Program-made: the position numbers and the translations under genes
Shown here: positions 37,542 through 40,288 of the stretch, piece by piece
Layout: every line of letters begins with the position of its first letter
Position numbering within the stretch: position 1 is the first letter of the stretch
Notes under the pieces: generated by a model
Told to the model about the DNA's origin: nothing
Database searches by the model: none
The model's input: only the letters and a program-made list of their open reading frames with translations
Assembly (NCBI RefSeq): GCF_006345805.1
Contig: NC_043006.1
Location: 42,470,001 to 42,534,000, forward strand
DNA: 64,000 bases
Origin: Octopus sinensis
Lineage: Eukaryota
Direction: 5' to 3'

Positions 37542-39257
37542 ATGAAATCGGTTGATATAGATACTAAAGATGGAATGAAGGTTATTGTGTTCGCGTTCGA
37601 TAGAGTTTGTTTTGAAACTATGGTATTCCCTCATACTGTCGGTCATGAGTGCATGGCTTTTGCTATCCACCAACTTGGAATAACAGATGCAAGATATTTT
37701 GGTTTCCGTCACGTCACTAATGACGTGAGAGTTGAATGGATTGATTTGAACAAGCCTTTGGGGACCCAACTCGACAAACATTGTAGTCAACATTGTTTTT
37801 ATTTTGGAGTGATGTACTATATATCGCGTGCTTATAACATTAAGGATGAGGCTGCCCTGTATCAGTATTTCAGGCAACTTCATGTTGATTATTTATATAG
37901 TCAGTATGATTGTTTACTTGAAAGGGCTATCAAACTGGCTTCGTTTTACCTTCGAGTGATTCTAGGTCCATACGATCCCAAAACGCATACTGTTACGACA
38001 GTGGGCCGCCACCTTCTTTTTCCTGCTAGCATACGGAGGGACGAGAAAATTGCTACAGCTGCTCAAGAAAAAGCTTTTCAGAATTACCAAACCCTTCATA
38101 TATCTTCTACAACTAGTATGGTTTTTTATATAATTGAATTCGAGTCTGCGACGTACTACGGCCTAGAGTGTCACCCTGCCATACTTTCCGAGAGTCGTGA
38201 GGCGGTGCATCTAATAACGTCCTACAACGGTATCATGGTGAAATATTTAAGGTCCCCTGATGCTTTTCTCCTCAAGTGGTCAGATATTGCCGCAGTCACA
38301 CGTTCTCAAAAGTCTAGTATAATTATCCAACAGTTATCTCGCTCCATACAACTAGAACTGGCTGATAAGAAGAGAGCAAAATATTTCTTCCAAATGGCTT
38401 TCCTTTTGATGCATTTTTATCAAGATAATCCAGAGTTCTGCGACAGATCGACAAAGGAACCTGCCAAGCCTGACGGCTACGAATCTTACTCGTTGCTGCT
38501 GTCAAGTTCTCAGTCGGAGACTCTGAGATCTGTTCTTCGTTACCAGCAGTCGCTGACTTCTATTCCTGATAACGTTCGATCGTCTCCCAAATCTCTTTAT
38601 GAAGCTACTGAAACTGCGCAATACCTCCTCGCTCAACCGTCACGTCCAGAACAAACTGCTCTAGGTGCAACAGAAGCAATTACTAGTCCATCGAAACCCT
38701 TAACGAGCGTCAGCGCTGCTGAGATACGTCTTGATGAAGAATTATTCCTGACTGGTTCCAAGGATATAAAATATGAAGCGAAGAAACTTAACAAAAGTAG
38801 TCAAACGCAATCTTTTTACATATCTATGATTAATGAACGATTCCAGAAGTATACCGAAACCAGTCCGATGCATTTACTTTCTCAAACTTTAAAAAATATT
38901 CTGCAGTATCTAGATGCAATAGAAAAGGCTGAAGGTGAAACCCAAGCGGATATTAAATCTAAACAAAGTACGGAAAAACATTTCTCCGATTCGCAACCAT
39001 TGAAAGAAAGTGGCATTCCTTATAGATATCCACCCAAATATCCATTTCCAAAAACCAAGTCGAAGGATACGGACATAGATCCTGCGAAACCTATTACCGT
39101 AGGGCAAATTTTGAAGAGAGTTCAAGACATTCAAGTACGAGATAAAAGCACTGAGTCCGTTTCACCCGCTAAATTGGAGAAAAGTAAGGAGTCGAAAGTT
39201 TCTGAAACTCAAACCATGTTGCCTAGTAGGAAGTACACATATCTGAACCACCGGTAA
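37542..39257 (+). CDS. Pez/PTPN14-like: FERM domain plus linker of a Pez/PTPN14/PTPN21-family tyrosine phosphatase (5' ORF, intronless)
   Basis: 571-aa ORF with Kozak-like GCCACAATG (37536-37544). N-terminal ~295 aa align by eye with the PTPN14/21 FERM domain (RYFGF, WIDLNKPL..QLDKH, FYFGVMYY, YQYFRQL, LFP, YYGLE, KWSDI, AKYF, HFYQDN). PPKY (PPxY) at 39030-39041. Confidence 0.9.
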   Translation: MKSVDIDTKDGMKVIVFAFDRVCFETMVFPHTVGHECMAFAIHQLGITDARYFGFRHVTNDVRVEWIDLNKPLGTQLDKHCSQHCFYFGVMYYISRAYNIKDEAALYQYFRQLHVDYLYSQYDCLLERAIKLASFYLRVILGPYDPKTHTVTTVGRHLLFPASIRRDEKIATAAQEKAFQNYQTLHISSTTSMVFYIIEFESATYYGLECHPAILSESREAVHLITSYNGIMVKYLRSPDAFLLKWSDIAAVTRSQKSSIIIQQLSRSIQLELADKKRAKYFFQMAFLLMHFYQDNPEFCDRSTKEPAKPDGYESYSLLLSSSQSETLRSVLRYQQSLTSIPDNVRSSPKSLYEATETAQYLLAQPSRPEQTALGATEAITSPSKPLTSVSAAEIRLDEELFLTGSKDIKYEAKKLNKSSQTQSFYISMINERFQKYTETSPMHLLSQTLKNILQYLDAIEKAEGETQADIKSKQSTEKHFSDSQPLKESGIPYRYPPKYPFPKTKSKDTDIDPAKPITVGQILKRVQDIQVRDKSTESVSPAKLEKSKESKVSETQTMLPSRKYTYLNHR

Positions 39258-40288
39258 CTGAGCCAACTTATCAAGCCCTCTCTAAATCGGAGTTGTTGGC
39301 CCTAGAAAGTTCTAAAGGAGCTGTACATAAGCATTCCAAGAAGCCATTTATTATGGTGGCTTCAGGTGCATTTAAAGACATTCGAAGTAGAGATAAATAT
39401 GAAAATCTGCAACGTAAATTAAATGAGGGCGAGGTTTTCACCGAGTTTCGCTCAACTGGCGTAAAAAGTCAAATGCCTTGTTCTGTTGGTTGTCATGTAG
39501 ATAACCTTTCTCGAAATCGCTATCAATCTATTGTACCTTATGACGAAAATCGTGTACAACTGTCTGGAAGACCTGACAATATGCTTGGTTATATAAATGC
39601 GTCTAGTATAAAATGGAGACGCGGTCTGCATAAATTGAGCTTCATTGCAGCTCAAGCGCCGCTAAAAAATACTGTCGAAGATTTTTGGCAAATGATTTGG
39701 GAACAAAAGGTTTCTATAATAATTATGCTGAATGCCAGGGATGACGAGGATAAACTTTTGTGTTGTCAGTACTGGCCTCAAGAATGGAATCTTGATCAAA
39801 AATTTCAGAGTGGACCGTTTACAGTTACTTTCCATACGTATAGGAGAACTCCCGAGTACTTTTTAGATGTTCTGACAATCACCAATGCTTCTGGTGAGCA
39901 ACAGCTAATAAGTAATCTTTATTTCACTCAATGGTCAGGAGATGACTGTCCGTGTGATTTATCAATTTTTGTCAGCATTTTGGAAGAGATTGACTCTGTA
40001 CAAAATCTTATGCGCACTAAAGATCCCGTCCAAGCTCCTATCGCTGTCCTGTGTCATGATGGAGTTGGTCGTACCGGTGTCCTAATAATGTCTTATATTA
40101 TGAAATATTGTCTAAAGCATGACATTGAAATGAATATATCACACTTGCTTGGCTTCCTCCGCTCCAATAGAATGTTTATGGTTACTTCACTAAAACAATA
40201 TATTTCCGTTCATGAAGCTTTGATTTATTTCCTGAAAGGCTTATTTGCTCCTTCAAAATCGTATCTCGTTGGTCCATTTAGGATCTAG
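39230..40288 (+). CDS. Pez/PTPN14-like: PTP domain of the same Pez/PTPN14/21-like gene (-1 frame relative to the 5' ORF; frame open from 39230)
   Basis: LQRKLNEGEVFTEF, NRYQSIVPYDENRVQL, GYINAS, FIAAQAPL..TVEDFWQMIWEQ, QYWP, VLCHDGVGRTGVLI (Cys at 40052), LRSNRMFMV..LKQY. These match the PTPN14/21 phosphatase domain. AATAAA follows at 40381. Confidence 0.9.
   Translation, partial: EVHISEPPVTEPTYQALSKSELLALESSKGAVHKHSKKPFIMVASGAFKDIRSRDKYENLQRKLNEGEVFTEFRSTGVKSQMPCSVGCHVDNLSRNRYQSIVPYDENRVQLSGRPDNMLGYINASSIKWRRGLHKLSFIAAQAPLKNTVEDFWQMIWEQKVSIIIMLNARDDEDKLLCCQYWPQEWNLDQKFQSGPFTVTFHTYRRTPEYFLDVLTITNASGEQQLISNLYFTQWSGDDCPCDLSIFVSILEEIDSVQNLMRTKDPVQAPIAVLCHDGVGRTGVLIMSYIMKYCLKHDIEMNISHLLGFLRSNRMFMVTSLKQYISVHEALIYFLKGLFAPSKSYLVGPFRI

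What the first reader, a model, noticed from the sequence alone, without database searches (positions are those of the whole stretch)
37542..40288. Intronless, divergent Pez/PTPN14-like gene: probable retrogene and pseudophosphatase that keeps PPxY
FERM, linker and PTP domains are encoded without the many introns expected for this family, which suggests retroposition. Long open frames persist despite heavy divergence. The P-loop keeps CX5R (CHDGVGR) and the pTyr loop reads NRY. However, the WPD loop is WSG (39932-39940, general acid lost), the His before Cys is Leu, and the Q-loop reads MVTS instead of MIQT. PPKY is retained in the linker; PPxY motifs in PTPN14/Pez are known to bind WW proteins such as YAP and Kibra. 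Inference: a catalytically weak or dead scaffold, or substrate-trapping paralog, acting on Hippo signalling, possibly lineage- or germline-specific.
Basis: partly seen in the sequence, partly recalled or inferred. Interest (0 to 1): 0.72.

Follow-up and report, generated by a model that had tools for sequence, protein, structure and literature searches.

The report
Divergent octopus Pez/PTPN14-like paralog gene
This is a real, fast-evolving but selectively maintained second copy of the Pez/PTPN14 phosphatase gene in Octopus whose active site looks crippled; being intronless does not mark it as a retrogene, because the normal cephalopod Pez gene is intronless too.

Summary
The window is Octopus sinensis chromosome CM016868.1. 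However, this assembly has two ORFs in different frames, 37542-39257 and 39230-40288. They are separated by a 1-nt deletion at 39244/45.

O. vulgaris carries the same locus as one uninterrupted 915-codon ORF, and the O. bimaculoides ortholog (84% identical) also reads straight through the junction. Between O. sinensis and O. vulgaris, dN/dS is 0.17 (P=3e-4), and indels are about 11-fold rarer in the CDS than in the flanks. It is therefore a maintained gene, not a processed pseudogene.

The degenerate catalytic motifs (WS[G/Q]DD, LCHDGVGRTG, MVTS) and the PPKY block are conserved in all three Octopus species. This supports a dead or weak phosphatase acting as a scaffold.

The retrogene argument fails as stated. 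The canonical Pez of O. bimaculoides and of a decapodiform is itself a single-exon ORF, whereas bivalve and gastropod Pez genes span 28-42 kb with introns. Intron loss may therefore predate, or be independent of, this duplicate's origin.

A Hippo or germline role is untested. The gene is already in databases, in fragmented form. Interest is moderate.

The parts
37542..40288 (+). Whole divergent Pez/PTPN14-21-like gene. It is a single exon of 915 codons in O. vulgaris and is broken into two frames in this assembly.
37542..39257 (+). ORF1 (frame 0), 571 aa: FERM domain plus most of the linker, ending at TAA 39255-57. It is held in NCBI nr/UniRef as a separate 571-aa protein.
37542..38441 (+). 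FERM domain (F1-F3). It is 35-36% identical to the coleoid canonical Pez FERM and aligns to PTPN21 FERM residues 24-290.
38442..39340 (+). Linker, mostly unalignable to canonical Pez. The LPAYRPSPDY and STPDL motifs of canonical Pez are lost.
39030..39041 (+). PPKY (a PPxY motif), positionally homologous to the canonical PPPPY. It lies in a 17-aa block (PPKYPFPKTKSKDTDID) that is identical in O. sinensis, O. vulgaris and O. bimaculoides.
39244..39251 (+). Frame break. One G is missing between 39244 and 39245 relative to O. vulgaris (CTGGAACCTGCGG versus CTGAACCACCGG), with two adjacent substitutions at 39250-51.
39230..40288 (+). ORF2 open frame (frame 2), 352 codons: linker end plus PTP domain, stop TAG 40286-88. 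The 311-aa version starting at ATG 39353 is a separate protein in nr.
39503..40225 (+). Classical PTP domain (Pfam PF00102 E=7e-62). The fold is preserved: pLDDT 84.8, TM 0.83 to the PTPN14 PTP domain.
39515..39523 (+). pTyr-recognition loop NRY, retained.
39932..39940 (+). WPD loop replaced by WSG (WSGDDCP); the general-acid Asp position is Gly. O. bimaculoides has WSQDDCP.
40049..40078 (+). P-loop LCHDGVGRTG. Cys and Arg are kept. The His before Cys is Leu, Ser at C+1 is His, and Ala at C+2 is Asp. The loop is identical in the three Octopus species.
40178..40189 (+). Q-loop MVTS, where canonical Pez has MVQT. The first catalytic Gln is lost and the second (QY, 40196-40201) is kept.

Best explanation
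The locus is an Octopus-lineage paralog of Pez (the PTPN14/PTPN21 family). It is a single-exon gene of about 915 codons encoding a FERM domain, a disordered linker with one PPxY (PPKY) motif, and a PTP-fold domain.

Origin. It arose by duplication inside the cephalopod lineage from a Pez gene. The surviving canonical form of that gene is itself intronless in coleoids, so intron loss may predate this duplicate. The copy then diverged very fast, to about 35-40% identity, but stayed under purifying selection.

Likely function. The active site keeps the CX5R cysteine and arginine and the pTyr-loop Tyr. It lacks the general-acid Asp, the first Q-loop Gln, the His preceding Cys and the Ala at C+2 (here Asp). 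It is therefore most likely catalytically dead or very weak. It would then act as a scaffold or adaptor: FERM for membrane or cytoskeleton targeting, PPKY for WW-domain partners, and the PTP fold as a binding module.

Frame break. The break in this window is a 1-nt deletion specific to the O. sinensis assembly. It is either a consensus error or a very recent lesion, not an ancestral feature.

Shown here: family membership, orthologs, an intact ORF in O. vulgaris, selection, motif states, and the intronless canonical Pez.

Inferred only: loss of catalysis, WW binding, any Hippo role.
For: Family.

Paralog, not ortholog:
- Canonical Pez exists in O. bimaculoides (P0167) and O. vulgaris (P0280). 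These are 97% identical to each other and 65% identical to cuttlefish Pez.
- The window gene is only about 35% identical to any of them.
- In O. vulgaris the two genes lie on different chromosomes.

Cephalopod origin: an NJ tree on 627 ungapped columns puts the window gene sister to the coleoid canonical clade (90% bootstrap). There are also 4 coleoid-only shared residues.

Orthologs: O. vulgaris CAI9728038.1, and L007 9308-12055, which is one 915-codon ORF. O. bimaculoides P0283 is 84% identical, differs only by in-frame gaps, and reads through the junction.

Selection:
- 11 synonymous against 7 non-synonymous changes, dN/dS 0.17, binomial P=3e-4.
- dS of 0.019 is close to the non-coding divergence of 0.016.
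- 1 indel in the CDS where 11.4 are expected from the flanks (P=1.4e-4).
- 57% of strongly conserved Pez sites are retained, against 27% of variable sites (P=9e-11).

Motifs are conserved across the three species.

Literature:
- The Ala at C+2 is needed for activity, and replacing it inactivates HD-PTP (PMC2661844).
- Q-loop Gln mutations greatly reduce PTPN21 turnover (PMC10901363).

Intronless canonical Pez. Intron-containing Mytilus and Gigantopelta Pez.
Against: - No expression data could be examined. No Logan transcript contig carries exactly these proteins. The O. vulgaris model may rest on protein alignment rather than transcripts.
- In this assembly the ORF is broken, and RefSeq lists two separate proteins.
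- The O. sinensis-O. vulgaris dN/dS rests on only 18 substitutions.
- A conserved Asp-Asp directly after the lost acid position (WS[G/Q]DD), together with retained Cys, Arg and the second Gln, leaves room for residual or altered catalysis.
- No decapodiform ortholog was found although the tree places the duplication before the octopod-decapod split. Long-branch attraction may have misplaced the gene.
- The retention test may be partly inflated by alignment bias.
Confidence: 0.62

Rival explanations
1. The frameshift is real and fixed in O. sinensis. The gene was functional until recently. It is now either a young unitary pseudogene or is split into a FERM-linker protein (571 aa, still carrying PPKY) and a separately translated PTP-only protein (311 aa).
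For: - The assembly sequence itself shows it.
- The site is not a long homopolymer (GG to G) and is accompanied by two adjacent substitutions.
- NCBI lists two separate proteins for the locus.
Against: - O. vulgaris (split about 2.5 My ago, PMC10700109) and O. bimaculoides (about 34 My ago) read through the site.
- There is no second lesion anywhere in 2.7 kb.
- Selection signals are strong.
- The indel-to-substitution ratio between the two long-read assemblies is high (4.2 to 15.7 per kb), so some consensus indel errors are likely.
Confidence: 0.3
2. It is a processed pseudogene that was dead on arrival: a neutral retrocopy of Pez.
For: It is intronless, highly divergent, and has one frame break in this assembly.
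Against: - About 50 stops would be expected in 915 neutral codons and none is seen in frame.
- dN/dS is 0.17.
- Indels are depleted in the CDS.
- The ORF is intact in O. vulgaris and conserved in O. bimaculoides after about 34 My.
- Retention is site-class dependent.
- The intronless state is shared with the functional canonical gene.
Confidence: 0.02
3. It is a classic retrogene made by an independent retroposition of a Pez mRNA. On this reading it is not a DNA-level duplicate of an already intronless gene.
For: - The CDS is a single exon.
- It lies on a different chromosome from the canonical Pez in O. vulgaris.
- AATAAA at 40383-88 and a short A-run at 40537-53 lie downstream of the stop.
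Against: - Intronlessness is uninformative because the canonical coleoid Pez is intronless too.
- No target-site duplication or convincing poly(A) tract was found.
- The event is too old for such marks to survive.
Confidence: 0.35
4. The PTP domain is still an active enzyme with a re-wired active site. Possibilities are the downstream Asp-Asp of WS[G/Q]DD supplying the general acid, or a changed substrate class.
For: - Cys, Arg, the pTyr-loop Tyr and the second Q-loop Gln are retained and conserved. The DD pair is conserved in three species.
- PTPN21, with a WPE loop, was long called inactive but has weak activity (PMC10901363).
Against: - Four separate catalytic-site positions are changed at once.
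- Asp at C+2 puts a negative charge in the phosphate-binding loop. Even Ser at this position inactivates HD-PTP (PMC2661844).
- Mutating the first Q-loop Gln greatly lowers turnover in PTPN21.
Confidence: 0.15

Closest known systems
Canonical coleoid Pez (O. bimaculoides XP_014778688.1 'PTPN14', O. vulgaris CAI9740667.1, cuttlefish PTPN14_21)
   Same: - FERM-linker-PTP architecture with no PDZ domain.
- Single-exon CDS.
- A PPxY motif at the homologous linker position.
- Coleoid-specific residues such as GH[D/E]C and YFGFR.
   Different: - Only about 35% (FERM) and about 40% (PTP) identical.
- About 200 aa shorter in the linker, with no MPFxxKLKR N-terminus.
- The LPAYRPSPDY, STPDL, GPLKMAAMNGL and C-terminal YLKNTRLI motifs are lost or degraded.
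- The catalytic WPD, HCSAG and QT residues are changed.
- It evolves 4-5 times faster between O. vulgaris and O. bimaculoides (84% against 96-97% identity).
Human PTPN14 and PTPN21 (PTPD2/PTPD1); Drosophila Pez
   Same: - Best sequence and structure matches for both domains.
- These are low-activity phosphatases. By established knowledge, their Hippo functions work largely through linker PPxY motifs binding the WW domains of YAP/Yorkie and Kibra, not through catalysis.
   Different: - The vertebrate genes have many introns and two PPxY motifs.
- They keep WPD (PTPN14) or WPE (PTPN21), HCSAG and the QT Gln.
- The octopus copy has lost all of these.
Pseudophosphatase PTP domains (HD-PTP/PTPN23, IA-2/IA-2beta, RPTP D2 domains)
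   Same: - The PTP fold and CX5R are kept while the general acid or the Ala at C+2 is substituted (PMC2661844).
- From my own knowledge, not checked here, IA-2 also carries Asp at the C+2 position.
   Different: - These are unrelated subfamilies with different domain architectures.
- Inactivity of the octopus protein is predicted, not measured.
Retrogene replacement (for example amphioxus SYCP1, PMC5803294)
   Same: A multi-exon ancestral gene is represented in a lineage only by single-exon copies. Here that applies to coleoid Pez against bivalve and gastropod Pez.
   Different: In this case the pattern applies primarily to the canonical coleoid Pez. The window gene is an additional, divergent copy. 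The mechanism is inferred from gene structure alone.

Membership tests
Pez / PTPN14-PTPN21 subfamily of FERM-PTPs | N-terminal FERM domain most similar to the PTPN14/21 FERM | tested here: met
   Pfam FERM_N and FERM_M. PTPN21 FERM E=8e-32, against PTPN3 4e-9.
Pez / PTPN14-PTPN21 subfamily of FERM-PTPs | C-terminal classical PTP domain most similar to PTPN14/21 | tested here: met
   PF00102 E=7e-62. PTPN14 195 bits and PTPN21 187 bits, against PTPN3/4/13 at 125 bits or less. The top Foldseek hits are 6iwd and 8gxe.
Pez / PTPN14-PTPN21 subfamily of FERM-PTPs | Long linker without a PDZ domain, carrying PPxY | tested here: met
   No PDZ hit. PPKY at 39030-41 aligns with the canonical PPPPY.
Pez / PTPN14-PTPN21 subfamily of FERM-PTPs | Falls inside the Pez clade in a phylogeny | tested here: met
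   In the NJ tree it is sister to coleoid Pez within molluscan Pez, with 90% bootstrap. Caveat: this is a distance method and the branch is very long.
Pez / PTPN14-PTPN21 subfamily of FERM-PTPs | Conserved Pez linker and C-terminal motifs (LPAYRPSPDY, SSTPDL, GPLKMAAMNGL, YLKNTRLI) | tested here: not met
   These are absent or strongly degraded in the alignment. The gene is a derived member, not a typical one.
Catalytically competent classical PTP | CX5R nucleophile and arginine; pTyr-loop Tyr | tested here: met
   CHDGVGR and NRY.
Catalytically competent classical PTP | WPD general-acid Asp | tested here: not met
   WSG here and WSQ in O. bimaculoides.
Catalytically competent classical PTP | P-loop VHCSAG (His before Cys, Ala at C+2) | tested here: not met
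   The loop is VLCHDG, conserved in three species. The Ala at C+2 is required for activity in HD-PTP (PMC2661844).
Catalytically competent classical PTP | Q-loop Gln pair | tested here: not met
   The first Gln is Thr (MVTS) and the second Gln is kept. Both matter in PTPN21.
Catalytically competent classical PTP | Measured phosphatase activity | not testable with these tools
   This needs a recombinant protein assay.
Processed retrogene | Intronless copy of an intron-containing parent gene | tested here: inconclusive
   The CDS is a single exon. However, the nearest relatives (coleoid canonical Pez) are also single-exon. Only non-cephalopod mollusc Pez genes have introns.
Processed retrogene | 3' poly(A) remnant and flanking target-site duplications | tested here: not met
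   No flanking direct repeat beyond chance was found. There is only a 10-nt A-run 250 bp after the stop.
Processed retrogene | Genomic location unlinked to the parent | tested here: met
   In O. vulgaris the divergent copy is on OX597822.1 (119 Mb) and the canonical copy on a 45.6-Mb chromosome.
Processed pseudogene | Neutral evolution (dN/dS near 1, accumulating stops and frameshifts) | tested here: not met
   dN/dS is 0.17. There is 1 indel where 11.4 are expected. No in-frame stops are seen where about 50 are expected. The ORF is intact in O. vulgaris.

The most novel reading that the evidence does not exclude
Two linked claims. First, the ancestral multi-exon Pez was replaced by a retrogene in the coleoid (or cephalopod) stem. 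Second, a further copy, possibly dating from before the octopod-decapod split, has been kept for tens to hundreds of millions of years in octopods. That copy would be a naturally 'substrate-trap-like' pseudophosphatase: Asp and Gln lost, Cys and Arg kept. It would tether WW-domain Hippo components through its invariant PPKY block. This would be a lineage-specific rewiring of growth control.
Probability: 0.15. Interest if true: 0.55.

Novelty: new member of a known kind. Interest (0 to 1): 0.36.

Why it matters
If confirmed, the locus adds a lineage-specific FERM-PTP pseudophosphatase to the short list of natural pseudo-PTPs. It would give a natural experiment on which Pez functions survive without catalysis.

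The side result is a small but clean case of gene-structure turnover: coleoid Pez genes have no coding introns, while other molluscs keep them. This also warns against using 'intronless' alone to call retrogenes in cephalopods.

Practically, the locus is mis-annotated in all three Octopus annotations. It appears as two proteins in O. sinensis, and as N-terminally truncated models of 684 aa in O. vulgaris and 488 aa in O. bimaculoides.

Tried and rejected
- **A short intron to join the two frames.** I checked GT...AG candidates around 39184-39262 by hand. The lengths and phases did not fit. The idea became unnecessary once O. vulgaris DNA and the O. bimaculoides protein were seen to read straight through.
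- **Target-site duplications and poly(A).** The direct-repeat search of 36800-41600 found only chance-level 11-20-nt matches and A-runs.
- **First word-indexed protein search, with a frame-joined query.** It missed the orthologs. It returned only the window's own ORF1 and two moth Pez proteins. The orthologs surfaced only through the exact cluster look-up of ORF2 and a search with the O. vulgaris protein. Absence from these searches is therefore weak evidence.
- **Exhaustive HMMER search with ORF1.** No representative is closer than canonical Pez at 35%. The unnamed Logan hits P0008 and P0010-P0012 proved to be canonical Pez of other phyla. No decapodiform ortholog was found.
- **DNA of the O. 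bimaculoides ortholog.** It could not be fetched because no gene with exactly that product is on record. There is therefore no codon-level dN/dS over the 34-My comparison.
- **Exon mapping of Mytilus and Gigantopelta Pez by tblastn.** It failed because those loci were not exported to the script machine. I used ORF lists and one protein comparison instead.
- **Counting derived residues shared with octopus or with decapod canonical Pez, to date the duplication.** The result was 2 against 2, which is uninformative.
- **Literature.** No paper mentions PTPN14 together with octopus.
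Full report
**Source and observation**

The 571-aa ORF1 product is found on one public contig, Octopus sinensis GCA_006345805.1 chromosome CM016868.1. Window position 1 corresponds to record position 42,470,001. The accession is used for O. sinensis in the literature.

The region 37542-40288 (+) contains two long ORFs.
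- ORF1 is 37542-39257, 571 aa.
- ORF2 is listed from a TTG at 39293, but its frame is open from 39230, and it ends at 40288.

Pfam finds FERM_N and FERM_M in ORF1. It finds a full classical PTP domain in ORF2 (E=7e-62).

Against solved structures, the FERM part matches PTPN21 FERM far better than any other FERM (8e-32 against 4e-9 for PTPN3). The PTP part matches PTPN14 and PTPN21 best among single-domain chains (195 and 187 bits).

An AlphaFold2 model of the PTP part is confident (pLDDT 84.8, pTM 0.85). Its best structural match is the PTPN14 PTP domain (6iwd, TM 0.83/0.89), followed by PTPN21.

- NRY at 39515-23
- WSG at 39932-40
- LCHDGVGRTG at 40049-78
- MVTS at 40178-89
- PPKY at 39030-41

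The open frames are far longer than chance allows. The longest stop-free run in 1000 shuffles was 186 codons. The other five frames carry 41-64 stops, and about 50 stops are expected per 915 codons of neighbouring non-coding DNA.

ORF1 and ORF2 are in different frames. Frame 0 ends at TAA 39255-57. Frame 2 is closed upstream by TAG 39227-29. A -1 shift must therefore lie within 39230-39257.

NCBI nr/UniRef hold the two pieces as separate proteins of 571 and 311 aa.

**Orthologs**

The 90%-identity cluster of the 311-aa piece contains Octopus vulgaris CAI9728038.1, 684 aa. Its locus was fetched as L007 (OX597822.1).

L007 aligns to the window at 98.4% over 4 kb. From the same ATG to the same stop, L007 9308-12055 is one uninterrupted 915-codon ORF holding FERM, linker and PTP. 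The annotated 684-aa model simply starts at an internal Met.

Within the CDS, the two species differ as follows:
- 16 isolated substitutions;
- a cluster at the junction, where O. vulgaris reads CTGGAACCTGCGG and the window reads CTGAACCACCGG, with one G missing at 39244/45 and two substitutions.

A search with the O. vulgaris protein found O. bimaculoides P0283 (488 aa, UniRef). It is 84% identical, differs only by three single-residue in-frame gaps, and reads YARLEPAKSEP across the junction. A continuous frame is therefore ancestral, and the break is specific to the O. sinensis assembly.

According to PMC10700109, O. sinensis and O. vulgaris split about 2.5 My ago, and O. bimaculoides split from them about 34 My ago.

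**Selection**

- Nei-Gojobori counts for O. sinensis against O. vulgaris are 11 synonymous and 7 non-synonymous differences. This gives dS 0.0188, dN 0.0033 and dN/dS 0.17. The binomial P against neutrality is 3e-4.
- dS matches the non-coding divergence of the 21-kb collinear alignment (15.7 substitutions per kb).
- Indel events occur at 4.16 per kb outside the CDS and 0.36 per kb inside it. One is observed where 11.4 are expected (Poisson P=1.4e-4).
- Over deep time, the copy keeps 57% of residues at sites strongly conserved among non-cephalopod Pez proteins, but 27% at variable sites (Fisher P=9e-11).

Together with the intact ORFs after 34 My or more, this rules out a neutrally decaying processed pseudogene.

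The copy does evolve 4-5 times faster than canonical Pez over the same species pair (84-85% against 96-97% identity).

**Relationship to canonical Pez, and the intron question**

An exhaustive HMMER search with ORF1 found nothing closer than canonical Pez proteins: cuttlefish PTPN14_21 at 35% and the gastropod Physella at 34%.

Canonical Pez exists in O. bimaculoides (XP_014778688.1, 1124 aa) and in O. vulgaris (CAI9740667.1, 1127 aa). In O. vulgaris it lies on a different chromosome from the divergent copy. The window gene is therefore a paralog, not the sole Pez.

An NJ tree on 627 ungapped columns places the window gene sister to the coleoid canonical clade, with 90% bootstrap. The canonical clade itself has 99% support. 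Four coleoid-only residues are shared. The branch is very long, so the duplication cannot be dated reliably relative to the octopod-decapod split.

The canonical genes are themselves intronless in their coding sequence.
- The O. bimaculoides gene is a single 3375-bp ORF. It is nested in the span of an ELP4/PAXNEB gene model.
- A decapodiform genomic contig carries a single 3357-bp ORF.

By contrast, other molluscan Pez genes have introns.
- Mytilus californianus Pez spans 42 kb.
- Gigantopelta aegis Pez spans 28 kb.
- In both, only the large linker exon forms a long ORF.

Coding-intron loss, most simply by retrogene replacement, is therefore a feature of coleoid Pez in general. The window copy may have inherited that state, or it may be a further retrocopy. 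Its intronless state cannot discriminate between these. No target-site duplication or poly(A) tract is left.

**Function (inferred)**

Fold-defining PTP motifs are kept: NxxxNRY, DENRV, YINAS, FIAAQAP, DFWQMIWEQ and YWP.

Four catalysis-specific positions are changed, and the changed states are conserved in all three Octopus species:
- The general acid is lost: WPD becomes WS[G/Q].
- The His preceding Cys becomes Leu.
- P-loop Ser-Ala becomes His-Asp.
- The first Q-loop Gln becomes Thr.

The literature read here bears on two of these. Even a Ser at the C+2 Ala position inactivates HD-PTP, and back-mutation restores activity (PMC2661844). Q-loop Gln-to-Ala mutations greatly reduce PTPN21 turnover (PMC10901363).

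The catalytic Cys and Arg, the second Gln and a conserved Asp-Asp after the lost acid are retained. Residual or altered activity therefore cannot be excluded.

PPKY aligns with the canonical PPPPY and sits in a 17-residue block that is invariant in the three species. By established knowledge of PTPN14 and Drosophila Pez, such PPxY motifs bind the WW domains of YAP/Yorkie and Kibra, and much of the Hippo function is phosphatase-independent.

The most likely mechanism is therefore a FERM-targeted adaptor that has given up catalysis. The Hippo link and any tissue specificity remain untested.

**The frame break**

Both assemblies come from noisy long reads plus polishing. ONT plus 10x is stated for O. 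vulgaris. PacBio for O. sinensis is from my own knowledge. The indel-to-substitution ratio between them is high, so a consensus error is plausible. On the other hand, the site is only a GG dinucleotide with two neighbouring substitutions. I lean towards an artefact or a very recent or polymorphic lesion (about 0.6-0.7) over a fixed split (about 0.3). Reads would settle it.

**Verdict**

The retrogene argument is undercut, and the frame break was overlooked. The locus is a derived new member of the Pez family. It is already present in public annotations in fragmented form but has not been studied. Interest is moderate.

Noticed in passing
L003 2001-5375 (O. bimaculoides CM046625.1) and L004 1001-4357 (decapodiform ENA contig): The canonical coleoid Pez/PTPN14 gene has no coding introns (single ORFs of 1124 and 1118 aa). 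Mytilus and Gigantopelta Pez span 42 and 28 kb with introns. The octopus copy lies inside the span of an ELP4/PAXNEB gene model on the same strand. This looks like retrogene replacement in the cephalopod stem.
   Followed up: partly
window 55534-57995 (+): Two long ORFs of 472 and 362 aa, rich in acidic, Ser and Thr residues, overlap by 46 nt in different frames. They contain an internal direct repeat of about 45 aa. They have no Pfam hit and are absent from the protein collection. They may be one exon of about 830 aa broken by another 1-nt indel in this assembly.
   Followed up: partly
window 14647-15874 (-): ORFs with a weak reverse-transcriptase (RVT_1) match. This is probably a LINE-type retroelement remnant.
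   Followed up: partly
window-wide, e.g. 50-942, 18254-19176, 20479-21210, 23390-24317, 27604-28118, 63074-63625: Abundant (TATG/TACA/CA)n-type microsatellites produce spurious 130-260-aa 'ORFs' rich in Y, I, H, T, C and V on both strands.
   Followed up: no
window 28371-49547 versus L007 (O. vulgaris): The collinear non-coding alignment shows 15.7 substitutions and 4.2 indel events per kb. This indel-to-substitution ratio is high for species that split 2.5 My ago. It suggests residual consensus indel errors in one or both long-read assemblies.
   Followed up: partly
Annotation of the locus in three species (P0001, P0281, P0282, P0283): The same gene is annotated as two proteins (571 and 311 aa) in O. 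sinensis. In O. vulgaris it is a 684-aa model starting at an internal Met, although the full 915-codon ORF is open. In O. bimaculoides it is a 488-aa model. The UniRef entry for the O. bimaculoides protein lists n=3 members, and these were not examined.
   Followed up: partly
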